Position numbers and translations under genes: made by a program. DNA of 64,000 nt from positions 124,001 to 188,000 of the IMG/VR virus record IMGVR_UViG_3300032245_001746; one strand, given 5' to 3'. The notes beneath the pieces were generated by a model. The model was not told the origin of the DNA and ran no database searches. It worked only from the letters and a program-made list of their open reading frames with translations. This document shows positions 3,648 to 63,101 of this stretch, piece by piece (within the stretch, counting starts at the first letter, position 1; each line of letters begins with the position of its first letter).

Positions 3648-4177
3648 AAAGGTTTAATGACTGGAGGACTTTTTTCTGTAACTTTGCCACTACTTGTTGT
3701 AATAGATTCTTGAAATTGTTTGCATATTAATATGGTTCTCATGTTTCCCCATAATTTAAATTCAGCATAATTTCTTTGAACAATTTCCCAATTTTCACCC
3801 AAATGTGGTGTATGAATTCTAGATCCTATTTTTGGCATGTGTCCAATTCTTTTAATTAAGTCATTAGTGTTGCACTCAATTGCAATTTCATTCATAGAAT
3901 CAAGACCAAATTGATTTAAAAAATTTTGCGATGCAACTGGATCATATAATCCCCAAAATTCAACAGGAAAATTAGAAAATATTTTTCCTCTAGCTTCATT
4001 ATAATCTGGATCTATTTCGCTATTAGCTATGAAAACTTCATAATAATAAATTGGACTACCAGATGACATTATAGTTTCTTGATCCCATAGATCAAACAAT
4101 TTTAATTGATTGTTTTTAGGATCAAATTGTCTTATACCCCCGCCAGCTTTGTATTCAGTTCCATCTGAATTTTTCAT
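3644..4177 (-). CDS. Neck / head-closure protein (T4 gp14-like)
   Basis: G.PIYYY, DPDYNE, QFGLDS.NE, PKIG.RI, WEIV pattern typical of gp14-like proteins; gene context. Confidence 0.65.
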   Translation of the reverse strand: MKNSDGTEYKAGGGIRQFDPKNNQLKLFDLWDQETIMSSGSPIYYYEVFIANSEIDPDYNEARGKIFSNFPVEFWGLYDPVASQNFLNQFGLDSMNEIAIECNTNDLIKRIGHMPKIGSRIHTPHLGENWEIVQRNYAEFKLWGNMRTILICKQFQESITTSSGKVTEKSPPVIKPF

Positions 4178-4698
4178 TTTTTAGGTCCTCGTTTTAGAGA
4201 AACTCCTTTTAATTTAGCAGAATGTCTGTCCGGTTCGTCTTTTAGAGAGAACATTAATTTTCTTGCTTCTGCTGTAATTTCTGCTGCCGAGTCACCAGAA
4301 CATTTTTTCTTATCTTGTAAAGATATTGTTTTTACATCTTTATTATAATATCCTTTTCCAATTATAAATGATCCACCACTATAATCAGGATGAAAATAAA
4401 TGATTCCAACCCATGTTCCATCTATCCAATTGTTTTTTGATACAATTATTCTTACAGGATCTTGTTCGTACACATGTTTAATGTGATATCCATTTTGTTT
4501 TAATGCTGCACCAACATAACCTAAAGAAATTTTAGCATATGCTTTTAAAATTTCTTTTAATTTACTTCTAAAATTCACTTCAATACTATAACGACCAGTT
4601 GTTTGTTCATTTAATATGTTGTTGTTAACACACCATTCATTTAAGGATGTGCTTTCATTAATTTTATTGAACATTGACCAATCTTTGTATGATTTCAT
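4174..4698 (-). CDS. Hypothetical protein with capsid-targeting-like leader
   Basis: N-terminus MKSYKDW...INE. Confidence 0.7.
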   Translation of the reverse strand: MKSYKDWSMFNKINESTSLNEWCVNNNILNEQTTGRYSIEVNFRSKLKEILKAYAKISLGYVGAALKQNGYHIKHVYEQDPVRIIVSKNNWIDGTWVGIIYFHPDYSGGSFIIGKGYYNKDVKTISLQDKKKCSGDSAAEITAEARKLMFSLKDEPDRHSAKLKGVSLKRGPKK

Positions 4699-4711: not shown

Positions 4712-5236
4712 TTATCTTAATTCAATTTTTTTAGATTCACCAGCACTTGGAGAAAACACTAATTCTTTAATTTTTATTTTTTTACCAAAAAATTCTTTGT
4801 TGCCCACTAATTCTTGGCATTTTCCTTTTTTTACGTATGCTAGAGTACAATGAGGCTTATATCCATTATAAGTTGATGTATATTTTAAAGATTTTAATTT
4901 ATCATTTAATTTTCTTAATTTGTCGCTTTCAACTTCTATTTTTACAACATCATAATCATCATTTTCAAATTTACTTATTTTTCCTAATTTTATTTCAAAT
5001 TCTTTTTCGTCTTTAATTATTTCTTTAATTTCATCAAATTCTGTTGTGTGTAATCCGTATAATACAGTAACATGAGGTTCTGTTTCATATCCTGATTTAT
5101 TTTCTTTATAATATAAATCATCTTTAGAAATATTTTTTTTAGCCCAACTTAATATTTTATCATATTCTACTGTTGCCATTACACATGAATAAGTGTATGA
5201 TTCGTTTAAAACAACCCAATTTTTAAAATCTAACAT
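4712..5236 (-). CDS. 2H phosphoesterase, Acb1/T4 gp57B-like
   Basis: Two HxT motifs: EPHVTVLYG and YKPHCTLAY; leader MLDFKNW...LNE. Confidence 0.8.
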   Translation of the reverse strand: MLDFKNWVVLNESYTYSCVMATVEYDKILSWAKKNISKDDLYYKENKSGYETEPHVTVLYGLHTTEFDEIKEIIKDEKEFEIKLGKISKFENDDYDVVKIEVESDKLRKLNDKLKSLKYTSTYNGYKPHCTLAYVKKGKCQELVGNKEFFGKKIKIKELVFSPSAGESKKIELR

Positions 5237-11156: not shown

Positions 11157-11759
11157 CTAATAATAATGCACATTTGTGTTTTGATCTATATCATATGGAG
11201 TGTTCTTCAATATATTTATTGCCGTTCTAGTTTCAATTACTTTTGGGCTTATTAATGAAATAGGATTATCCCAATATACTTCTTCTACCGTTCCATGTTG
11301 TGGCATGTCAGTTGTTGTAAACATAATTGCAGAAATAGCTTCTGTCATATTTGCTTTTGTAAATCCTTTTGTTGTTAAATTTTTAAATTTTGGTTTTTCG
11401 AAATCTTTTGGATGAATTAGTTTATTAATATTTGATGCTTTATATATGCTAATGATATGATCAAATTGAACTTGAGGAACCCATTTTCCATACGTGCAAC
11501 TTATAGCAAAAACTCCTGCATTTCCGTAACCAAGTTTGTTTTCGTTAATAATTTTTTCAATATTTTCTTTTAAGGTAAAATGAATAAATTTATCTTTTTT
11601 TAATTCTAATTTGAAAAATTTTCTAGTATTATGTCTTTTCCAAAAATCTATTTGTTGAGAGTTATTTGGTTGTTTAGCCCAAATATTTTTACTAAATTCA
11701 CTTCCATGAAATTCTTCTTTGTCAAATTCTAAATTTTCAAACCACTTTTTAAAATTCAT
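11157..11759 (-). CDS. Putative ADP-ribosyltransferase-fold protein with leader
   Basis: FIHFT..NI.KI....L, GVFA, EEVYW spacing resembles H-class ARTs; leader MNFKKWFE. Confidence 0.4.
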   Translation of the reverse strand: MNFKKWFENLEFDKEEFHGSEFSKNIWAKQPNNSQQIDFWKRHNTRKFFKLELKKDKFIHFTLKENIEKIINENKLGYGNAGVFAISCTYGKWVPQVQFDHIISIYKASNINKLIHPKDFEKPKFKNLTTKGFTKANMTEAISAIMFTTTDMPQHGTVEEVYWDNPISLISPKVIETRTAINILKNTPYDIDQNTNVHYY

Positions 11760-12495
11760 TTGTTTTCCTTGTTATTTCAAAATTATTTCCATTCATTTTT
11801 AAATCCCAATCTTTATTGAAAAATCTATTAAATAATTTTTCATATACTGATGATCTTCTGTTTTTAATCATTTCAATTCCATGTTTGTAAGATGTAATTG
11901 CATTTCTTAATTCATTTGTGTTGAAATAAAATTCAAACGAATCTTTTTGAAGTTTATTAAAAATTGTTAAAATTTTGCCAAAATAAATGTTTATTTGATT
12001 TAAAAAATCTAAACAACTTGTGTCAGATTTTAAATTTGAAACTAATTCTTTGAAATAATTTATTATAATCAAATCTTGATTGTCAGTTTCATTTGTAATT
12101 TCTTCAAGTGATGAAAAAACTTTATTTTTTATTGGGTTTAAATTTATATTAGATATAATTTTTGAATCATTTTTATCTTCATAAGATTGAAAATATATTT
12201 TTTTAATATTGATCTCATCAGCTTTTTCTTTTATTAAATACAAAACTCCAGGTAATATTTCTGGATCTCTTCCAAGAATTTCGTTTCGTTCTGTTTTTTC
12301 ATATGATTCATTTACATAAAAAGACACTTCGTAAACTTGATCTTGTTTTTTAAAAAAAGTAACTTTAACTTCATTTTTTAATGAAGTTACAAAACTTAAT
12401 TCAATTATGTTATTACGAAATGATTTTTTTATAGAACCATTTGGCTTTCTTAATTCTACAATTTCATTTAATATCCATTTTTTAAATTCCAACAT
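11749..12495 (-). CDS. Hypothetical protein with leader
   Basis: MLEFKKWILNE start. Confidence 0.7.
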   Translation of the reverse strand: MLEFKKWILNEIVELRKPNGSIKKSFRNNIIELSFVTSLKNEVKVTFFKKQDQVYEVSFYVNESYEKTERNEILGRDPEILPGVLYLIKEKADEINIKKIYFQSYEDKNDSKIISNINLNPIKNKVFSSLEEITNETDNQDLIIINYFKELVSNLKSDTSCLDFLNQINIYFGKILTIFNKLQKDSFEFYFNTNELRNAITSYKHGIEMIKNRRSSVYEKLFNRFFNKDWDLKMNGNNFEITRKTNEF

Positions 12496-12546
12496 GTAAT
12501 ATTTATTTGTTTTAATATATAAATTCTAAAGAAAGGTTATAAAAAT

Positions 12547-12846
12547 ATGTTAACATTTAATAAAGTTTTAGAAAAAATTGATGAATCTCATTCTAATAAT
12601 TCTGAAGAATTTAATGATAAAGCAATTGCTACCATTAAAACTGGATTAAATTTGGATGAAGATTTTTGGGATAATTTTAAAAATATATGTAATTCGCCTG
12701 GTTTGGGAGAGTTATTGGGAGTGAGTAAAAACGTAATTTCAACATGGTATTCCAAAATAGATAAACATCTAAATAAAGTTGAAGAAATGGAATTAAATTC
12801 TTCTAAAAGAAATAAAATGATAAAAACTGGATACGAAGATGAATAA
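12547..12846 (+). CDS. Small protein with leader and possible HTH
   Basis: MLTFNKVLE..IDE; LGELLGVSKNVISTW. Confidence 0.65.
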   Translation: MLTFNKVLEKIDESHSNNSEEFNDKAIATIKTGLNLDEDFWDNFKNICNSPGLGELLGVSKNVISTWYSKIDKHLNKVEEMELNSSKRNKMIKTGYEDE

Positions 12847-15510: not shown

Positions 15511-15870
15511 ATGAAAACATTTAAAGAATGGATGTTTAATGAAAATTTAAGTTTAATTCAAAGTTTTGCTCAACAAAATAATGTAGAATTAGATATTTAT
15601 GAATCATTTGATGACACAATAAAAATTTCAAGAATTTTTGTTCCTAAAGAATTGAGAAAACAAGGCTTGGGCACTAAAGTTCTCGAATTTGTTTGTAATT
15701 TTGCTGATTCTAATAATAAAATTATTTTATTGTCGCCATCAATTGATTTTGGTGCAACCTCGTTAAACAGATTATATTCTTTTTATTCAAAATTTGGATT
15801 TATTAAAAATAAAGGTAGAAAAAAGAATTATAAATACAGTGAAACTATGATTCGTTATCCAAATCGTTAA
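15511..15870 (+). CDS. GNAT acetyltransferase with leader
   Basis: VPKELRKQGLGT acetyl-CoA motif, FYSKFGF; leader MKTFKEWMFNE. Confidence 0.85.
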   Translation: MKTFKEWMFNENLSLIQSFAQQNNVELDIYESFDDTIKISRIFVPKELRKQGLGTKVLEFVCNFADSNNKIILLSPSIDFGATSLNRLYSFYSKFGFIKNKGRKKNYKYSETMIRYPNR

Positions 15871-48882: not shown

Positions 48883-48976
48883 ATTATAAATCTCCTATAA
48901 AAAGTTAAATTATATATCATTATCTTTTTTATTTTTATTGTTTTTGGAAAAAATTTTTTCCAATCTATATAAATAT

Positions 48977-49525
48977 ATGCATTTAATAAATCCCCAAATA
49001 AATACAAGAATTTGTCAGATAATAAAAGGTACAATATTAGGCGGCTCATCTTTGATTTATTCTAAAAATTCAAATTGTCCTTACTTATCAATGAGATCAA
49101 AAAATTATTCATGGCTTTATTACAAAGCTTCAGAATTATCTATATTATCATCTAATAAGTGTATAATTGAAGATAAAACAAATAGATGGCATTCAATGTG
49201 CTACCCAATTTTTAAAGAAATTCATAATATATTTTATTCAAATAAATTAAAATTACTTAAAAATAATGCGTTAGATGATTTGCATGATATAGCTTATATG
49301 ATTTGGTTTGGAGATTCTGGATCATTAAAAAATAACATTTTAAATTTAAATATTATGAATTGGAAACAGTCTTCTGATATTATTTGTAAATATTTCAAAG
49401 AAAGTGGATTTAATTTCACTTTAAATAAAAATTATAAATTAACTTTTGATGAAAAATCTTCTTTAAAAATAATGAACATAATTTCACCTCATTTTCCTTC
49501 ATTTTTTAAGTTGAAAAAAATTTGA
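48977..49525 (+). CDS. Degenerate LAGLIDADG-like protein
   Basis: QIIKGTILGGSS and IWFGDSGS resemble the two LAGLIDADG helices with acidic residues lost. Confidence 0.55.
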   Translation: MHLINPQINTRICQIIKGTILGGSSLIYSKNSNCPYLSMRSKNYSWLYYKASELSILSSNKCIIEDKTNRWHSMCYPIFKEIHNIFYSNKLKLLKNNALDDLHDIAYMIWFGDSGSLKNNILNLNIMNWKQSSDIICKYFKESGFNFTLNKNYKLTFDEKSSLKIMNIISPHFPSFFKLKKI

Positions 49526-50166: not shown

Positions 50167-50203
50167 GAAAATGCATGATGAAAATTTTTCATCATGCATT
50201 TTC
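50167..50203. terminator. Bidirectional terminator
   Basis: 18-bp arms GAAAATGCATGATGAAAA/TTTTCATCATGCATTTTC. Confidence 0.75.
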
Positions 50204-50548
50204 GTTATAATGAAATAAAATTTGATTAGCTATTTTTTTACTAGAATTGTTTTTTATTTTTAGCAACAAATTGTATAATTCTTTATAATTCTTTTTATCT
50301 AAGTATCTTAAACAAGCTGCTGTTAAAGATCCAATTGGAGACTTTTCTGTTATTCTACTACCAGTCATTACTTTAATTTTTTCAATTGATAATGGAAATT
50401 TAAATAAAAATAACTCCCCAGACAGATCTTGCATGTGCTGTGCAGAAATAGGATTTCGCAATATTTTTTGCATTAAACTTTCATCAGGAGAATCATACCA
50501 ATCTTCTGATTCCTCTTTGTAAAACCAAGATTTAAATGAAACAATCAT
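50192..50548 (-). CDS. Hypothetical protein with leader
   Basis: MIVSFKSWFYKEE. Confidence 0.7.
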   Translation of the reverse strand: MIVSFKSWFYKEESEDWYDSPDESLMQKILRNPISAQHMQDLSGELFLFKFPLSIEKIKVMTGSRITEKSPIGSLTAACLRYLDKKNYKELYNLLLKIKNNSSKKIANQILFHYNENA

Positions 50549-50592
50549 AGTTTTTTATATATTGTTTTAATATATAAAAAACTATGATTGTT
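50540..50592. repeat. Perfect 24-bp inverted repeat covering both start codons of a divergent gene pair
   Basis: AACAATCATAGTTTTTTATATATT-GTTTT-AATATATAAAAAACTATGATTGTT. Confidence 0.9.
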
Positions 50593-51600
50593 CTTGATTT
50601 TAAATTATTTATAGAAAACGAAAAAATGGAAAATATACCTAAAGGAAAACTTTTTGGTTTAGACGCGAAACGTGTATCTACTCAAGAATTAGAATTGGTG
50701 GTACAAGAATTAAGAAAATTAATTGGAAGTAATTTTTCTTATTTTGAAAGAGTTGATTCGTTAAAAGAAAAACATGATCATGGAGATATAGATATTTTGG
50801 TAATTCCTCCATTGAATATTAAACAATTATTAAATGATTCAATTCCCGAAAAAGTTTTAAAATTTTCTAAAAATGATTGCGTAAATTCATTTTTGTTTCA
50901 ATCTGAATATGTGAACAAAAATGTTCATGTTGATTTAATAACTTGTGAAAATAAAGAAAAATTACAATCTAAGAAATATTATTATGGATTAAACGATTTT
51001 TCAGCTTTGGTTGGAGTTTTATCTAAAAAATTAAACTTTAAATATGGAACTGAAGGGTTTTTCAAAAGGTTTAAAGATAAAAAAGGAAATTGGCATGATG
51101 TTTTTATTACTTTTAATTTATTAAAAGGACTAGAAATATTGGGATTTGATATATCTTTATATAATAAAATTAAAAATTATAATGATATAGCAGAATTTGT
51201 GCTTACAAGTCCATTGTTTGATTATAGATTTTTTACACAAGATGCTTTATTAGCTAGAGATAGAGTCTCACTTGGAAGGCGTCCTAATTTAGAACAAATG
51301 ATTAATTTTGTAATTAAATCAAATAAAACCGCAACTATTACTGATGAAGATCATTTCTTTAAGAAATTAATGCCAGAACAATATAAAAAATGTCAAGAAG
51401 AAATGAAAGAAATAAATAATAAAACTTATGAAATTGCAAATAAATACAATGGATCTTGGTTAATGTTAAATTTTGGCTTAAAGCCAGGTCCAGATGTCGG
51501 CAAAATCTTGAAATTAATGAATGATAAATTTAAAGAAAATTTACCAAATGCTGATGAGCAAGAAGTAGTTAATTTCGTAAAATTAAATTTAAACAAATAA
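50584..51600 (+). CDS. Pol-beta-family nucleotidyltransferase with leader
   Basis: HGDIDIL and VHVDLI catalytic Asp residues; C-terminal NG..LM..GLKPGPDVGKIL as in CCA/poly(A) polymerase tails. Confidence 0.75.
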   Translation: MIVLDFKLFIENEKMENIPKGKLFGLDAKRVSTQELELVVQELRKLIGSNFSYFERVDSLKEKHDHGDIDILVIPPLNIKQLLNDSIPEKVLKFSKNDCVNSFLFQSEYVNKNVHVDLITCENKEKLQSKKYYYGLNDFSALVGVLSKKLNFKYGTEGFFKRFKDKKGNWHDVFITFNLLKGLEILGFDISLYNKIKNYNDIAEFVLTSPLFDYRFFTQDALLARDRVSLGRRPNLEQMINFVIKSNKTATITDEDHFFKKLMPEQYKKCQEEMKEINNKTYEIANKYNGSWLMLNFGLKPGPDVGKILKLMNDKFKENLPNADEQEVVNFVKLNLNK

Positions 51601-52017: not shown

Positions 52018-54153
52018 ATGAAATTGCTTTTTTTCAAAGAATGGTTTAATTTATATGAAGGTAAATTCGAAGATCAATCTTTATCAATATTGAATAAAGA
52101 TGAAGAGTTGTTTAATTTATTAGCTTCAAAAGCACCAGAACCTAAATATTTACCAATTATTTCTTATTTTTATAAACAATCAGGCAATTTAAATGTTTTG
52201 AAAGATTTAATAAATAAATATAAAGAATTTGTTGATAAGAAAAAGCTGTCAATGATTCAAATAACAAACAAAGGAGCTTTTTTAAATAATCAAGAAATTA
52301 ATTATGTTAAATTTGCTGAAATTATACACGCCGCAGAATCAAATAATCGAATTGTTAAAACAAACATAGATACAAACGCATCTGGATTGAAACCTATTTT
52401 TACTATTAAAGATAAAATAGAAATTTATAAAGCTAAAGATTCTAGAGAATGTGTCCTTTTAGGAAAAGGATATACCTTCTGTATAAGTAATCCTAATGCC
52501 GGTCTAAATATGTGGAATACATATAGAAATTCATATGAATCAACTTTTTACTTTGTTTTTGAAAAAACAAGAAGACAAGATGATCCATTAAGAATTGTTG
52601 TTGTAGATGCTCGAAGAGATGGCGATTTTGCACTTACTGATGCTAATAATAAAACTGGAACAATTAGTGAATTTAACCATTTTGATGAGTATTTTGGATA
52701 TCTTAATTCTGTTTATAAAATAAATTCTGATTCTTTATTTATCAATGAGCCACTAACACAGCAAGAAAGAAAAGATAATGCAATAGTAGATCAAAAAATA
52801 ATGACATTAGATAATTTTAAAAAATTGACATTATCACAAAAAGAAAAATATATTGGGAATGGACACGAACTCACCAATGAACAATTTAATTACATTTTTG
52901 ATAACAATATGGTTAATTTTATTATTCAATATATAAACACTGGAATTAAATTGGATAATGATCAATTAAAAAAAATATTTAAAAATCCATCTTATAAAAA
53001 AACTTATTTAAGACAAAGACTTGAAGTTCAAAGACATCTCCATAGACCAGATATTGGAAGATTTGAATATTTAAATTTGGATGATAATTCTAAAAGACAA
53101 ATTGATTTAAACAAAGTTGATAAAAAACAATGGTTTTTAGAAGCTGCGTATTTGGGAGATGAAGAGTATGTTTCGAATACAATTCAAAACTTAAAAGGAA
53201 ATCCTGATGACGATGGCACATTAACATCAGCATATTTGGAAGCTGTAAAATCTAAAAATTTAAATATTGTTAAAATGATAGATGAAAAATTTGATAAATC
53301 TCATGCATTAAGTAAAACTGCCATTGGATGGATATTTGATGATATTACAAAATATAGTACAATTGAAATTTTAGATTATTTTGTTAAAAAATATCATAAA
53401 CATTATAATATTGGATTTGGATTTCAAAACGTTGCAAAAAGAAATGAAGTTGCAATGGTTAAATATTTTATTGATAATTTTGAAATGAAAGATTATGAAT
53501 ATAGTTTAGCATTATATTCATCTGTTAAAAATAATGCTATTGATTCTTTAAATATTATTTTAGACAGCCCAGAATTAGAAAACGAACATACTGTATTAAA
53601 CACCGCTATGAGTATAGCTGCAGAACATGGAAATCTTAAAGTTGCAAAATTAATTTTAGACAAACATAAAATTAATTTTTATGATGCAACTTTAAATGCA
53701 ATAGAACATAAACAATATCAATTTTTAGAATTTATCTTTAAAGCCAGAAAAGATTTTCCTGAAAAATGGCTAGTGGATTTTTTGAAAACTGCAATTAAAG
53801 CTAAAAGCTTACCAATTTTCAAATTGATATTAAGCCAATCATCTGATTCTGAAAAACTACTTAGAAATAATTTGTTAGATTATATTGAAAATTATAAAGA
53901 AGATAATGATGAATTATATAACTTCATTAAAAAGAAAGATTTTGAATTTTATTTTAATTCAGGAATTAATTTAGCAAAATCTTCTGACATAAATTCAAAA
54001 TCAAAAAATGAAATTAAATATTTTTTTAATATGATTAGAGATAATGGAATTAAAGATTTTTCAGAAATTAAAAAGGCTGCAAAAGAAGCTGGAAATATCC
54101 ATACATATAATGTTTTAAATGATATTCCATTTTTGAGAAGTAATTATGAATAA
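52018..54153 (+). CDS. Large protein with leader, possible PcfJ/GNAT-like domain and ankyrin-like repeats
   Basis: MKLLFFKEW..LYE; LG.G..FCIS..W..Y..FYF; repeats such as AAEHGNLKVAKLIL and AVKSKNLNIVK. Confidence 0.6.
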   Translation: MKLLFFKEWFNLYEGKFEDQSLSILNKDEELFNLLASKAPEPKYLPIISYFYKQSGNLNVLKDLINKYKEFVDKKKLSMIQITNKGAFLNNQEINYVKFAEIIHAAESNNRIVKTNIDTNASGLKPIFTIKDKIEIYKAKDSRECVLLGKGYTFCISNPNAGLNMWNTYRNSYESTFYFVFEKTRRQDDPLRIVVVDARRDGDFALTDANNKTGTISEFNHFDEYFGYLNSVYKINSDSLFINEPLTQQERKDNAIVDQKIMTLDNFKKLTLSQKEKYIGNGHELTNEQFNYIFDNNMVNFIIQYINTGIKLDNDQLKKIFKNPSYKKTYLRQRLEVQRHLHRPDIGRFEYLNLDDNSKRQIDLNKVDKKQWFLEAAYLGDEEYVSNTIQNLKGNPDDDGTLTSAYLEAVKSKNLNIVKMIDEKFDKSHALSKTAIGWIFDDITKYSTIEILDYFVKKYHKHYNIGFGFQNVAKRNEVAMVKYFIDNFEMKDYEYSLALYSSVKNNAIDSLNIILDSPELENEHTVLNTAMSIAAEHGNLKVAKLILDKHKINFYDATLNAIEHKQYQFLEFIFKARKDFPEKWLVDFLKTAIKAKSLPIFKLILSQSSDSEKLLRNNLLDYIENYKEDNDELYNFIKKKDFEFYFNSGINLAKSSDINSKSKNEIKYFFNMIRDNGIKDFSEIKKAAKEAGNIHTYNVLNDIPFLRSNYE

Positions 54154-57980: not shown

Positions 57981-59547
57981 TATTTATTAATCTAATGATG
58001 GAATTTTTATTGTTTAAAATTTAATTAAGACTTATTTTTTATTCCAATTTTAATGTTATTTATTTCTGTTTCTGTCCATGTACTAGATGTATTTGGATTT
58101 ACATTAAATATTTCTGTATGATATGGAGTAGTTGATTGCAAAGTCCCATTCACAGTTTTATTTGATCCAACTTCGTTGTTATTAATTACAAATTTTGTAA
58201 TTCCATCAACAGCAGCTTGAGACTCAGCAAATAATGAATTTAATTGAATTCCTTTAATATTATTAATTGTTGATAAATTTTTTATATTAAATTGAGATAC
58301 ATCGCCGTTAACACTTGATGTAATAAATTTAGTTATATTACTATGTACTTGTGACATTTCTCTAGCATTTAAAGAATTAGTGTAATCAAGTGACCAATCA
58401 TCCATGTAAATTGCTGCTGTATGTGGTCCAAATTTAATCGTACTTGGAGAAGTTAAATTAAAAGTAAATTGCTGATATGTAGTTGTAACATTAATCGTTG
58501 ATTGAACATTATTTATTGTGATTGGATATGAAGTTGATGGCTGTCCAACACCAACTCTAGCCCAAAATGAAAAAATACTTGCATTTGTATCAAATTGAAA
58601 CCAACAAGAAGTATTTATAATAGACAATCCTGCCGGAGTAGTTCTGACAACCGAACCAGAAGTTTCTCTTATAATACCTCTATTACCAGAAGTAATTTCA
58701 TTTAAATAACTAATATTTGTACATCCAAGTGGAATTAAAAATTCATGCGGGTCAGTAAATGATGTAGTAAACGATGTTGATAATACGGTTCCATTAGCGT
58801 TACCAAAATTTGAAGTATCATCAGTTATTGGTATTAATGTTTCTATTCTTGGAATATACAATTCAGTTCCAATTTTAACGTTATTTGCTGCACCAGTGTC
58901 ATCAAGAATATAAAAATCATCAATTAAATATGTTGAATATAAACCAACAGCCAAAGTAAAAGTTCCATCATAACTCATTGATGTGGCACTTGTTGCTCGC
59001 TCCGTGCCATTAATGTAAAGACGAATTGGATTTCCAACCGAAGGAGTAATTGGAATTAACATTTCAATATGTGCCCAATTATTGAACATGACTGAACTTG
59101 GTTGTGTATACAAAAGAACATTATTTAAATAAATTATATGATTTCCACTCGAATTATTATAAAGTATTTTAAGTCCTTTGGTATTATCGTTAGCACCATT
59201 TGATAATCTAATTTCAAAATTTAAAGCTGATGTAACTTTAATGTTAAATCCCAATATAAAATGAGAAATACCTGTTGCAGATATTGCTTTTTTTAAAAAA
59301 CCAGCATTTTTAGGACTTGTTATTTGAACAGCACTACCACTAAATCTTCCAGGTTTAGCAATCCACGATCCAGATACAGTTGTCCAATTCCTAGCCAATC
59401 CTGTTGTGACATTATCCGTTGGATCATTTGATGATGTGTTTAATTGAAAATTTCCATAATTATCAAATCCCTCTAAAAATCTAATTGCCATTTATACTCC
59501 AATTAATTTGTATAATAAATATATTTATTAATCTAATGATGGAATTT
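57981..59547. repeat. Exact 26-bp direct repeats (57981-58006 and 59522-59547) flanking one gene
   Basis: TATTTATTAATCTAATGATGGAATTT at both sites. Confidence 0.9.
58025..59491 (-). CDS. Probable virion appendage / tail protein (lectin-like beta sandwich)
   Basis: F.EGFD.Y start, W.HIE..., LYING, IDDFYILD.TG..NN, NP.T...WT. Confidence 0.6.
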   Translation of the reverse strand: MAIRFLEGFDNYGNFQLNTSSNDPTDNVTTGLARNWTTVSGSWIAKPGRFSGSAVQITSPKNAGFLKKAISATGISHFILGFNIKVTSALNFEIRLSNGANDNTKGLKILYNNSSGNHIIYLNNVLLYTQPSSVMFNNWAHIEMLIPITPSVGNPIRLYINGTERATSATSMSYDGTFTLAVGLYSTYLIDDFYILDDTGAANNVKIGTELYIPRIETLIPITDDTSNFGNANGTVLSTSFTTSFTDPHEFLIPLGCTNISYLNEITSGNRGIIRETSGSVVRTTPAGLSIINTSCWFQFDTNASIFSFWARVGVGQPSTSYPITINNVQSTINVTTTYQQFTFNLTSPSTIKFGPHTAAIYMDDWSLDYTNSLNAREMSQVHSNITKFITSSVNGDVSQFNIKNLSTINNIKGIQLNSLFAESQAAVDGITKFVINNNEVGSNKTVNGTLQSTTPYHTEIFNVNPNTSSTWTETEINNIKIGIKNKS

Positions 59548-60292
59548 CTGATTGTTTTACATCTCTTCCATACTTTCTTGAGTGTCCAAAATCAAAAGAT
59601 TGTAATTTATTTTTATTATTTAATCCCAAATTGTCAGGAGACCAATCATGTCCTATGGAATATCCAGTTTTTTTAAACACCTTTTCCATTAATTTTATAA
59701 TTTGATTTGCAAAATCCAAAACCATTGGATCTTCTGGGCGTCCAGCCATCCAATAATTAAATTCTTTTATGTTAAATTTGGTTGGAACTTTAGTTTTATC
59801 TTTGTTTTCATCTTCTAAATCAGAAATAAATTGATAAACTAAATAAGTTGCATCATGTATTTCAATATCTATTTTTTTAAAATCAGTATTTAACTCTTTC
59901 ATTGCAATTAAATACATTCCCTGATATGTAATAACATCAACAACCGGAAAGCTTGCATCTCCTTTCATTAAATAAGCTATATTTGCCTCATCTACTCCTT
60001 TTGTAAATTTAACTACATATTTATTTCCTAAAAACAATACGCATCCTTCCATTCCACACTTGGTTTTATTATGTGATCCAGGAATAAATTTTGAATTAAA
60101 TTTTCTAATCCAATTACATAAGGTTCCACAAGAATTTCCATCCATTAATTCTTGTGGAACCTTAGATATTACATTATCTTCATTAAAAACATCTGAAGAA
60201 TAGAGTTTTTTCAAACCAAACACCACCCTCTCAGCAGTTTGCATTAAAAAACTTGTTTGTCTTTCTGTTATTAACCATTCTTTGAAATTCAT
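59528..60292 (-). CDS. Kinase-like protein with leader (paralog of 62319..63101)
   Basis: G.EG.V, VVKF..EA, HDWSPDNLG, FDFG. Confidence 0.7.
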   Translation of the reverse strand: MNFKEWLITERQTSFLMQTAERVVFGLKKLYSSDVFNEDNVISKVPQELMDGNSCGTLCNWIRKFNSKFIPGSHNKTKCGMEGCVLFLGNKYVVKFTKGVDEANIAYLMKGDASFPVVDVITYQGMYLIAMKELNTDFKKIDIEIHDATYLVYQFISDLEDENKDKTKVPTKFNIKEFNYWMAGRPEDPMVLDFANQIIKLMEKVFKKTGYSIGHDWSPDNLGLNNKNKLQSFDFGHSRKYGRDVKQSEIPSLD

Positions 60293-62318: not shown

Positions 62319-63101
62319 ATGAATTTTAAAGAATGGTTAATAAATGAAAGAAATAACGATGCATTTGAAATAAGAATGAAAAAAATAACTTCATTTTTAT
62401 TAAAACTTTATTATGGAATTCAATTTAACGAAATTGCTGAAGTCCCACGTGAATTGTTTTCAGATAATAAATCTAGTAAATTATTTAATTGGATTAAAAG
62501 ATTTGATCCAAATTTTAAATCTGCTGATGGACTAAAAATAAAATCTGGAACGGAAAGTTCCGTGTTGTTTTTAGGAAATGGTATTGTAATTAAATTCAAT
62601 GATAATCCAAGTGAAGCCAATATCGCCTTTTTAATAAAGGGAGACCCAGATTTTCCAGTTTTAGATGTTGGCTCTTTTAATGATAACAATAATTTAATTT
62701 ATGTAATAGCAATGAAAGAATTAAAAGTGTCTTTTAATGAATTGAAACAAGATGTTGAGTCAGCTTTGAATTTGGTCCATATGTTTCAATATAAATTAAA
62801 AGAAATAAATAAATTAAATTCTAAAAAAGTTGTATCTGAATTTAATGAATATAATTTTTTTAGATGGCTATCTTCATATAAAGGAAGAGAAAATCGTTCG
62901 TATCAAATATTGGTTTATTGTATACAACTAATAAAATTATATAATAAATTACATGATAAAACAGGATATTATTCTGCAAACGATATTCATGATGGAAATT
63001 TCGGTCTTACAGATAAAAACACATTGTCTACATTTGATTATGGTTATTCTGATTTAGTTGATCCAAAAAAATCCAAAAACATTGAAATCGATGGTGTTTA
63101 A
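62319..63101 (+). CDS. Kinase-like protein with leader (paralog of 59528..60292)
   Basis: GTES.V, VIKF..EA, DIHDGNFG, FDYG. Confidence 0.75.
   Translation: MNFKEWLINERNNDAFEIRMKKITSFLLKLYYGIQFNEIAEVPRELFSDNKSSKLFNWIKRFDPNFKSADGLKIKSGTESSVLFLGNGIVIKFNDNPSEANIAFLIKGDPDFPVLDVGSFNDNNNLIYVIAMKELKVSFNELKQDVESALNLVHMFQYKLKEINKLNSKKVVSEFNEYNFFRWLSSYKGRENRSYQILVYCIQLIKLYNKLHDKTGYYSANDIHDGNFGLTDKNTLSTFDYGYSDLVDPKKSKNIEIDGV

What the first reader, a model, noticed from the sequence alone, without database searches (positions are those of the whole stretch)
50540..50592. Perfect inverted duplication gives two divergent genes the same promoter, start and first codons
Seen: 24-bp perfect arms with a 5-nt spacer. 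Each arm holds AATATATAA, an A-tract and ATG ATT GTT, so two unrelated proteins both start MIV and continue into the leader. Neither has a Shine-Dalgarno. Inference: a snapshot of how new cargo is recruited, in which fold-back duplication of a promoter+start module grafts late expression onto a neighbouring ORF. It could also form a cruciform.
Basis: partly seen in the sequence, partly recalled or inferred. Interest (0 to 1): 0.62.

Follow-up and report, generated by a model that had tools for sequence, protein, structure and literature searches.

The report
Self-correcting palindrome spanning two phage gene starts
In a huge AT-rich phage, two back-to-back genes share a perfect 53-bp palindrome that contains a promoter-like box, the start codon and the first codons of both genes; relatives show it arose once by inverted copying and has since been kept perfectly symmetric, a clear natural case of a known replication copying error shaping gene starts, not a snapshot of new-gene capture.

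Summary
Arms 50540-50563 and 50569-50592 are 24 nt and 100% complementary, with a 5-nt spacer. This is the longest perfect hairpin repeat in the 320-kb phage record. Each arm carries AATATATAA, six bases, then ATG ATT GTT, with no Shine-Dalgarno.

It is not an assembly artefact: independent assemblies cross it, and three related lineages carry their own versions.

It is also neither a snapshot nor cargo capture:
- The gene pair (118-aa unknown protein, 338-aa Pol X-fold nucleotidyltransferase) predates the palindrome.
- Palindrome-bearing loci form one clade (support 99/97). In the sister clade the nucleotidyltransferase gene has its own AAGGA Shine-Dalgarno and a different start, while the small gene already has an arm-like module. 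An inverted copy of the small gene's 5' module therefore overwrote the neighbour's 5' end.
- Since then 10 of 24 arm positions have changed between lineages, always mirrored, with no mismatch. The spacer stays 5 nt but varies freely, and it is inverted between 98-99% identical strains.

Arm homogenisation plus spacer inversion are the published signatures of replication template switching at inverted repeats. AATATATAA is a recurrent promoter-like box (19% of gene upstreams against 5.5% of controls). "Late" timing is unsupported. A second, younger twin-start palindrome lies elsewhere in the same genome.

The parts
50540..50563 (-). Left arm. Read on the minus strand it is the 5' module of the 118-aa gene: box AATATATAA (50563-50555), six bases, ATG (50548-50546), then codons ATT GTT.
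50564..50568 (.). 5-nt spacer (loop), GTTTT on the + strand. It is inverted (AAAAC) in the 98-99% identical strain L002, has a different sequence in every lineage, and is always 5 nt long.
50569..50592 (+). Right arm, the 5' module of the 338-aa gene: box AATATATAA (50569-50577), six bases, ATG (50584-50586), then ATT GTT.
50192..50548 (-). 118-aa protein of unknown function. Homologues (42-51% identity) sit in the same divergent position only in the 7-member clade. The AF2 model has pLDDT 85 with residues 3-15 disordered. No Pfam, PHROG or PDB fold match.
50584..51600 (+). 338-aa Pol beta / Pol X-fold nucleotidyltransferase (GDIDIL motif). It belongs to a large metagenomic phage family. The AF2 model has pLDDT 89 with residues 1-21 disordered; best fold matches are ASFV Pol X and Pol lambda/mu/beta.
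50167..50203 (.). Separate perfect hairpin (18-nt arms, 1-nt spacer) between the convergent ends of Hsp20 and the 118-aa gene. It is terminator-like in position and is not part of the twin-start palindrome.

Best explanation
The palindrome is a pair of back-to-back, identical 5' expression modules. Each is a -10-like promoter box (AATATATAA), a 6-nt gap, an ATG without Shine-Dalgarno, and the first two codons. The modules drive two unrelated divergent genes, probably as leaderless or near-leaderless mRNAs. Because the two boxes are only 14 bp apart centre to centre, they probably cannot be occupied by RNA polymerase at the same time. The palindrome arose once, in the common ancestor of one clade of huge phages, when an inverted copy of the small gene's module overwrote the Shine-Dalgarno-led 5' end of the neighbouring nucleotidyltransferase gene. 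It has since been kept perfectly symmetric by recurrent strand or template switching at the hairpin during replication. This process copies one arm from the other (arm homogenisation) and occasionally flips the loop (spacer inversion). The disordered N-termini of both proteins tolerate the overwriting of codons 2-5. Shown: the derived state, the mirrored changes, the spacer inversion, the recurrence of the box, and the absence of an SD. Inferred: that the box is a promoter, where transcription starts, mutual exclusion of polymerase binding, and the replication mechanism itself.
For: (1) Polarity. Palindrome-bearing loci form a clade (99/97), sister (95/99) to L009+L127, which have no palindrome. 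In those outgroups the small-gene side closely resembles the arm of the L005 group, while the nucleotidyltransferase side has AAAGGA and MKTF/METF starts. (2) Concerted evolution. There are four distinct arm/spacer versions: window 24 nt, L005-8 25 nt, L124/125 27 nt, L126 25 nt. In a centre-anchored comparison 10 of 24 arm positions differ between lineages, every difference is mirrored, and there are zero mismatches. The mirrored changes include a 3-nt indel, a T>C at -1, and a 6-nt deletion in L124 that lengthens the arms, so both proteins there start MLEFK. (3) The spacer is always 5 nt, free in sequence, and inverted between the window (also X1 and L131) and L002, each as an unbranched through-contig. 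Words diagnostic of both orientations occur in run X3. (4) Published mechanism: template switching between short inverted repeats gives arm homogenisation and spacer inversion (PMC8604942) and expands inverted repeats at promoters (PMC13100816). (5) Box. There are 37 exact copies, 21 of them intergenic (11% of the genome is intergenic) and 17 within 60 nt upstream of a same-strand start. With up to 1 mismatch the box lies upstream of 76/400 genes, against 5.5% of coding control windows. Distances are bimodal: 3-10 nt with no SD, or about 13-34 nt with an SD in between. (6) A second twin-start palindrome lies at G000 73162-73205. It is perfect here, has one arm mismatch in a 95% strain, and is absent in 51% relatives. 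(7) AF2 models show both N-termini disordered.
Against: No transcription start is mapped. All available runs are contigs, and the one RNA-library contig that covers the site spans the whole palindrome (50443-50810). If that contig is not DNA carry-over, it would mean a transcript starting upstream of the box. There is no canonical sigma-70 -35/-10 pair (3 hits against 4.8 expected), so which polymerase or sigma reads the box is unknown. Perfect symmetry in every sampled lineage, with no decayed palindrome inside the clade, could also reflect direct selection on symmetry. Co-occurrence of both spacer orientations within run X3 could come from fold-back chimeras made during library preparation and cannot be settled without raw reads.
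Confidence: 0.6

Rival explanations
1. The symmetry itself is the selected feature. The palindrome would be a regulatory element, either an operator for a dimeric regulator that controls both genes at once or a supercoiling-dependent cruciform that gates both promoters. Selection, not a copying mechanism, would keep the arms complementary.
For: Every sampled lineage in the clade keeps a perfect palindrome with exactly 5 nt between the arms. The inner 11 nt of the arms are nearly conserved between lineages. The AT-rich stem folds strongly as single-stranded DNA. The palindrome has persisted through about 35% protein divergence.
Against: 24-27 nt perfect half-sites are far longer than any operator needs. 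The outer half of each arm, which includes coding sequence, changes freely between lineages as long as it is mirrored. A mirrored 3-nt indel and a mirrored 6-nt event are easy by copying and hard by independent compensatory mutation. The spacer is inverted between near-identical strains and is not conserved. No regulator has been identified. The conserved inner part equals a box that recurs upstream of many unpaired genes.
Confidence: 0.2
2. The box is not a promoter but an A/U-rich, Shine-Dalgarno-independent ribosome-loading element. Transcripts would start further upstream, inside the opposite gene, and so contain the whole palindrome as an RNA hairpin that masks the start codon.
For: A contig from a metatranscriptome library spans 50443-50810 across the palindrome. 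There is no sigma-70-type -35 element.
Against: The same box also lies 13-34 nt upstream of many genes that have a normal GGAG-type SD between the box and the ATG. That arrangement fits a -10 element and not a ribosome site. DNA carry-over in the RNA library is not excluded, and depth is only about 5.
Confidence: 0.1
3. The palindrome is a DNA-processing site, such as a replication origin, a telomere-resolution or packaging site, or a homing-endonuclease target, that only happens to overlap two gene starts.
For: It is the longest hairpin in the record. It lies within a broad local maximum of cumulative GC skew at 172-182 kb. A free-standing LAGLIDADG gene lies 1 kb away.
Against: The skew feature is broad, follows the switch in gene strand, and would be terminus-like, not origin-like. 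The centre is an asymmetric, variable 5-nt spacer, unlike dyad-centred resolution sites. LAGLIDADG presence does not track the palindrome: it is present in L009-12 without a palindrome and absent in L005/L007 with one. A second, unrelated twin-start palindrome exists in the same genome.
Confidence: 0.05
4. Assembly fold-back artefact.
For: Several short-read assemblies break exactly at the palindrome (L001+L013, L003, L004).
Against: A 38.9-kb Logan contig of the likely source run at depth 34 crosses it with no difference. A 530-kb scaffold (L131) and L002 from another sample also cross it. Three further lineages in seven assemblies carry their own perfect versions at the orthologous position.
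Confidence: 0.01

Closest known systems
Template-switch (quasipalindrome) homogenisation of short inverted repeats with spacer inversion (Ripley 1982 in phage T4, as cited in PMC8604942; E. coli quasipalindrome hotspots, PMC7202029; yeast coding genes, PMC8604942; maintenance of hairpins, PMC8794818)
   Same: A perfect inverted repeat in the derived lineage against none in the outgroup. Clustered multinucleotide changes that make one arm the complement of the other. A short spacer. Spacer inversion between close strains. Amino-acid replacements as a by-product.
   Different: The published yeast coding-sequence cases have shorter arms (arm lengths of 10-16 bp are given in the passages read) and lie inside single genes. 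Here the arms are 24-27 bp and span an intergenic region plus the starts of two different genes. The repeat has been tracked as continuously perfect across lineages with about 35% protein divergence.
Inverted-repeat expansion at promoters by template switching (yeast GRE2; PMC13100816)
   Same: Inverted-repeat growth in a promoter region, with possible consequences for expression.
   Different: In yeast the repeat affects transcription-factor sites of one gene. Here each arm is a whole promoter-like box plus start codon, so one event re-equipped a second gene with a new 5' end and removed its Shine-Dalgarno.
Overlapping divergent promoters with leaderless mRNAs in phage switches (for example lambda PRM/cI; from my own knowledge)
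   Same: Back-to-back promoters in a very short intergenic region, and an ATG at or next to the transcript 5' end without a Shine-Dalgarno.
   Different: Known switches are not perfect palindromes, do not share start codons and first codons, and use repressor operators. No regulator is evident here.
Minute hairpin-loop inversions in chloroplast non-coding DNA (from my own knowledge; reviews found were not read)
   Same: Recurrent flipping of a few-nt loop between perfect inverted-repeat stems among close relatives.
   Different: Those hairpins are mostly 3' stem-loops in non-coding DNA, not promoter and start modules of two genes.

Membership tests
Template-switch-homogenised inverted repeat | Perfect inverted repeat in the derived lineage, imperfect or absent repeat in the outgroup | tested here: met
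   The palindrome clade (99/97) is sister to L009+L127, which show only chance pairing.
Template-switch-homogenised inverted repeat | Changes between lineages are mirrored on both arms (arm homogenisation), including multinucleotide changes and indels | tested here: met
   10 of 24 positions differ, all are mirrored, and there are 0 mismatches. A 3-nt indel and an arm-extending 6-nt deletion are also mirrored.
Template-switch-homogenised inverted repeat | Spacer inversion between close relatives with unchanged arms | tested here: met
   GTTTT in the window, X1 and L131; AAAAC in L002. Each is an unbranched contig with both unique flanks.
Template-switch-homogenised inverted repeat | Direct demonstration that polymerase switches template at this site | not testable with these tools
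   This needs replication or mutation-accumulation experiments.
Divergent promoter pair giving leaderless mRNAs | A recurrent upstream motif with constrained distance to gene starts | tested here: met
   Box upstream of 76/400 genes against 5.5% of controls, with bimodal distances.
Divergent promoter pair giving leaderless mRNAs | Mapped transcription start at or within a few nt of the ATG | not testable with these tools
   Only Logan contigs are available. The RNA-library contig is uninformative about 5' ends.
Divergent promoter pair giving leaderless mRNAs | No Shine-Dalgarno between the box and the ATG | tested here: met
   No G in the 15 nt before either ATG, while the genome otherwise uses SD.
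Canonical sigma-70 promoter | TTGACA-like -35 element 16-18 nt upstream of a TATAAT-like -10 element | tested here: not met
   3 weak hits in the region against 4.8 expected, and none serves either ATG.
T4-type late promoter | TATAAATA box upstream of late (structural) genes, with a gp55-type sigma factor | tested here: inconclusive
   The arms hold 7/8 matches only. The box is absent from the 70 nt upstream of the tail sheath and prohead protease genes. A 174-aa sigma70-region-2 ORF exists, but its role is unknown.
Telomere-resolution or origin palindrome | Dyad symmetry through the centre, with a position at a genome end or a replication skew switch | tested here: not met
   The 5-nt spacer is asymmetric and variable, and there is no specific skew extremum.
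Assembly artefact | Not reproducible in independent assemblies or samples | tested here: not met
   The palindrome is crossed in X1, L131 and L002. Orthologous palindromes are found in L005-8 and L124-126.

The most novel reading that the evidence does not exclude
The palindrome is a working genetic toggle and not a passive product. The 5-nt loop flips at appreciable frequency in phage populations. Either this flip (placing GTTTT next to one box and AAAAC next to the other) or supercoil-driven cruciform extrusion would decide which of the two mutually exclusive promoters fires. That would give a recombinase-free, replication-driven phase switch between the small protein and the Pol X-like enzyme.
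Probability: 0.08. Interest if true: 0.75.

Novelty: new variant of a known kind. Interest (0 to 1): 0.45.

Why it matters
This locus shows, with an outgroup and four diverged ingroup versions, that one inverted-copy event can replace a gene's whole 5' end, exchanging a Shine-Dalgarno-led start for a box-plus-ATG start. It also shows that hairpin-templated copying can then hold two unrelated genes' promoters, start codons and first codons in lock-step for a long evolutionary time. This extends template-switch mutagenesis, known from T4 rII, E. coli and yeast, to the evolution of regulatory and start modules in huge phages. There are two practical consequences. First, such palindromes break short-read assemblies, so the spacer orientation in a consensus sequence should not be trusted. 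Second, identical N-terminal residues in neighbouring proteins can be a DNA-level by-product and need not reflect protein function.

Tried and rejected
Searches that found nothing useful:
- A DNA search of the phage collection found nothing.
- tblastn gave only distant Pol-beta-like hits for the 338-aa protein and none for the 118-aa protein.
- Single-protein scans of IMG/VR found no relatives. The family profile was needed.
- The 118-aa protein has no Pfam, PHROG or PDB fold match.
- Rfam has nothing at the site.
- The generic sigma-70 and terminator scan gave fewer hits than shuffles.
- The literature search for a described perfect-palindrome, leaderless, divergent-promoter arrangement in phages found none.

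Method problems:
- The MAFFT alignment of the palindromes (A3) mis-registered the mirrored indels, and one of my coordinate ranges was shifted. I replaced it with a centre-anchored count.
- P0079, the 73% relative at the second palindrome, has no DNA on hand.

Ideas considered and rejected:
- Origin of replication: no specific skew extremum.
- LAGLIDADG target site: no co-occurrence.
- Other divergent pairs in the genome: among 46 pairs, no other start-spanning repeat above 12 nt appeared using my first-ATG gene calls. The second case emerged only from the genome-wide hairpin list.
- Within-sample coexistence of both spacer isomers in X3: I do not claim it as proven, because fold-back chimeras would give the same words.

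Not run: complex prediction (no binding claim is made) and the large representative protein search (not needed).

Full report
**Context.** The window is G000:C1:124001-188000 of a single 319,857-bp IMG/VR virus record with 28% G+C. CheckV estimates it at 63% complete. The same locus also lies on a 530,789-bp scaffold (L131). The record encodes a tail sheath, a T4 gp23-type capsid protein (296 bits), a gp21-type prohead protease (92 bits), Hsp20, an RNA ligase, a Mom-like protein, a LAGLIDADG endonuclease and a small sigma70-region-2 ORF. It is therefore a huge AT-rich myovirus from wastewater, river and sludge samples, not a eukaryotic virus. Table 11 was used throughout.

**Observation.** The arms are 50540-50563 and 50569-50592. 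They are 24 nt long and 100% complementary, with the spacer GTTTT between them. Read outwards, each arm is AATATATAA, six bases, then ATG ATT GTT. The flanking ORFs are 50192..50548 (-, 118 aa) and 50584..51600 (+, 338 aa), and both start MIV. BLASTP finds no significant similarity between the two proteins (E = 1.6). There is no G in the 15 nt before either ATG, while the genome overall shows clear G enrichment at -11..-8. The palindrome is the longest perfect hairpin repeat in the record. Composition-matched simulations reach only 11-13 nt arms, and window shuffles expect 0.01 matches to the arm. The ATG at 50584 is the true start, because the conserved N-terminal block M..FK.F.E of the family lies upstream of the next in-frame ATG.

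**Not an artefact.**
- A 38.9-kb Logan contig of the probable source run crosses the site at depth 34 without a single difference.
- The 530-kb scaffold L131 and L002, from another sample, also cross it.
- Other short-read assemblies break exactly there: L001 and L013 (same sample, one from each side), L003 and L004. This is a practical warning for assemblers, not evidence against the structure.

**The gene pair is older than the palindrome.** The 338-aa protein has a large metagenomic family (76 clusters). It has a Pol beta/Pol X nucleotidyltransferase fold (AF2 pLDDT 89; best matches ASFV Pol X and Pol lambda/mu/beta). Other hits are a PHROG annotated as DNA polymerase and a weak C-terminal match to poly(A) polymerase/CCA-enzyme tails. 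The 118-aa protein looked like an orphan in the word search. It is nevertheless 42-51% identical to the small divergent genes that sit in the same position in relatives. Those relatives share the synteny Hsp20 / small gene (-) / nucleotidyltransferase (+) / ankyrin protein. Small-protein homologues are detectable only in a 7-member clade of the nucleotidyltransferase tree.

**One origin, with clear polarity.** About 100 further loci that carry the nucleotidyltransferase gene, including L009-12 and L127, have no hairpin of 8 nt or more spanning that gene's start. Palindrome-bearing loci (window, L005-8, L124/125, L126) form a clade with 99/97 support. That clade is sister, at 95/99, to L009+L127. 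In L009 and L127 the nucleotidyltransferase gene has an AAAGGA Shine-Dalgarno and starts MKTF or METF. Their small gene already has an AATAAATAA-type box a few bases from ATG TTA AAT TTT, which closely matches the arm of the L005 group. The simplest reading is that an inverted copy of the small gene's 5' module replaced the neighbour's Shine-Dalgarno-led 5' end.

**Concerted evolution since then.** Each lineage has its own version, and every version is perfect:

| Lineage | Arm length | Spacer | Both proteins start |
|---|---|---|---|
| Window | 24 nt | GTTTT | MIV |
| L005-8 | 25 nt | GTTGA | MLEF |
| L124/125 | 27 nt | GCTGT | MLEFK |
| L126 | 25 nt | ACTAC | MLEF |

Anchored on the centre, 10 of 24 arm positions differ between lineages. 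Every difference is mirrored on the other arm, and no lineage has a mismatch. In a gapped reading the mirrored events include a 3-nt indel and a T>C at -1 of the ATG. In L124 a 6-nt deletion in the nucleotidyltransferase gene lengthens the palindrome. The spacer is always 5 nt but is free in sequence.

**Spacer inversion.** Between 98-99% identical strains the spacer is inverted. It reads GTTTT towards the nucleotidyltransferase gene in G000, X1, L131, L001+L013 and L004, and AAAAC in L002. Both X1 and L002 are unbranched contigs at k = 31 that include both unique flanks. Each orientation is therefore the dominant real form in its own sample. In run X3 two contigs begin with the same 30-mer (one arm base, GTTTT, the arm) and then continue into different genes. 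That shows words of both orientations in one run. Library fold-back chimeras would give the same words, so I leave within-sample coexistence open.

**Mechanism.** Arm homogenisation together with spacer inversion is what polymerase template switching between short inverted repeats produces (PMC8604942, read; see also PMC7202029 and PMC8794818). The same process is reported to expand inverted repeats at yeast promoters (PMC13100816). A loop that cannot be copied from the partner arm explains the constant 5-nt spacer with unconstrained sequence. Single-stranded DNA of the region folds into the full 24-bp hairpin at -20.8 kcal/mol (z = -10). Both AF2 models have disordered N-termini, residues 1-21 and 3-15. 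This explains why overwriting codons 2-5 is tolerated.

**What the arms do.**
- AATATATAA occurs 37 times in the record. 21 copies are intergenic, although only 11% of the genome is intergenic, and 17 lie within 60 nt upstream of a same-strand start.
- With one mismatch allowed, the box precedes 76 of 400 predicted genes, against 5.5% of coding control windows.
- The distance from box to ATG is bimodal. At 25 genes it is 1-10 nt with no Shine-Dalgarno. At the others it is about 13-34 nt with a GGAG-type site in between.
- That pattern fits a -10-like promoter element with a start a few bases downstream. In the close arrangement this gives leaderless or near-leaderless mRNAs. It fits an A/U-rich ribosome site poorly.
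- There is no sigma-70-type -35 element, and the box is not upstream of the tail sheath or prohead protease genes.
- The two boxes are 14 bp apart centre to centre, so simultaneous occupation by two polymerases is unlikely. This last point is inference.

**Why a quasi-palindrome existed to begin with.** 27 of 400 genes start M-x(0-5)-[FYW]-K-x-[FWY], against 2 at an internal control position. Both palindrome genes belong to this class. Many genes also share the box-ATG arrangement. Any two such genes placed head to head are already partly palindromic.

**A second case.** A second twin-start palindrome lies at G000 73162-73205, with 17-nt arms and a 10-nt spacer. Its two genes begin MNLEFKKF and MNNLNFKFW. 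It is perfect here. In a 95% identical strain (L135) it has one arm mismatch. In 51% relatives it is absent, although each gene there has its own box.

**Rivals.**
- Direct selection on symmetry (an operator or a cruciform switch) remains possible. It is disfavoured by the length of the arms, by the free but mirrored change of their outer half, by the mirrored indels, and by the unconserved, flipping spacer.
- Reading the box as a ribosome site rests on a single low-depth RNA-library contig across the site.
- The origin, resolution-site and endonuclease-target ideas fail on the skew profile, on the asymmetric centre, and on the lack of co-occurrence with the LAGLIDADG gene.

**Verdict.** It is wrong about time and meaning, because the event is old and maintained, and neither gene was new cargo. 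The mechanism belongs to a known kind. The twin-start arrangement and its long, traceable maintenance in huge phages appear to be new, since the literature search found no description.

Noticed in passing
whole record G000; in the window e.g. 4174-4698(-), 4712-5236(-), 11157-11759(-), 15511-15870(+), 52018-54153(+), 59528-60292(-), 62319-63101(+): 27 of 400 predicted genes, 86 to 853 aa long, start M-x(0-5)-[FYW]-K-x-[FWY], often followed by acidic residues (for example MNFKEWL..E); only 2 match at an internal control position. The phage has a T4 gp21-type prohead protease and a gp23-type capsid protein. From memory, the motif resembles the T4 capsid targeting sequence of internal proteins; the concept is cited in PMC3012670, but the sequence itself is not given there. 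These may be proteins packaged into the head. This was not tested.
   Followed up: partly
G000:C1:73162-73205 (outside the window; locus L132 1663-1706): A second twin-start palindrome with 17-nt arms and a 10-nt spacer. Each arm ends in ATG AAT, and the divergent genes start MNLEFKKF and MNNLNFKFW. There is one arm mismatch in a 95% strain (L135) and no palindrome in 51% relatives (L133/L134). The first-ATG call for the minus gene (73188) is probably 21 nt too long.
   Followed up: yes
window 50167-50203: Perfect 18-nt-arm hairpin with a 1-nt spacer between the convergent ends of Hsp20 and the 118-aa gene, overlapping the latter's stop codon. Contigs in runs X2 and X3 carry an extra T at its centre (after 50184).
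   Followed up: no
whole record G000: 31 perfect hairpin repeats with arms of 16 nt or more, against none in five simulated genomes. Most are intergenic at gene ends, and many have A-runs and T-runs on either side, like bidirectional terminators despite their low G+C.
   Followed up: partly
G000:C1:107036-107075 (outside the window): 16-nt-arm palindrome whose arms each contain a CATATATAA box. The + gene's ATG lies at the arm/spacer boundary, and no minus-strand gene is evident.
   Followed up: no
run X3, record 9 (17.5-kb contig), laid at window 50564-50581: Another contig in a river metagenome shares the 18 nt at window 50564-50581 (spacer plus box plus A-run) and then continues TATG AAA TAT TTA AAA TAC TTT (MKYLKYF). 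The same start module therefore precedes a different gene in a related phage or at another locus.
   Followed up: no
window 50344-50810 and 50891-51390, run X5: Wastewater metatranscriptome contigs cover the 5' half of the small gene, the palindrome and most of the nucleotidyltransferase gene, but not Hsp20. One 153-nt contig changes strand at 50449-50472. DNA carry-over is not excluded.
   Followed up: no
window 48938-49525: A free-standing LAGLIDADG_2 endonuclease gene is present here and in L001, L003 and L009-12, but absent from the syntenic region of L005 and L007. This is mobile-gene presence/absence next to the locus.
   Followed up: partly
G000 record as a whole; L131: The record is estimated at 63% complete, and the identical locus sits at 257 kb of a 530,789-bp scaffold. 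The phage is probably a genome of about 0.5 Mb.
   Followed up: no
window 12495-12547: The intergenic region contains TTGTTTTAATATATAAATT, which shares 17 nt with the palindrome centre (spacer plus box). Here it lies 24 nt upstream of an SD-led gene. A T-rich or C-ending pentamer precedes most boxes.
   Followed up: partly
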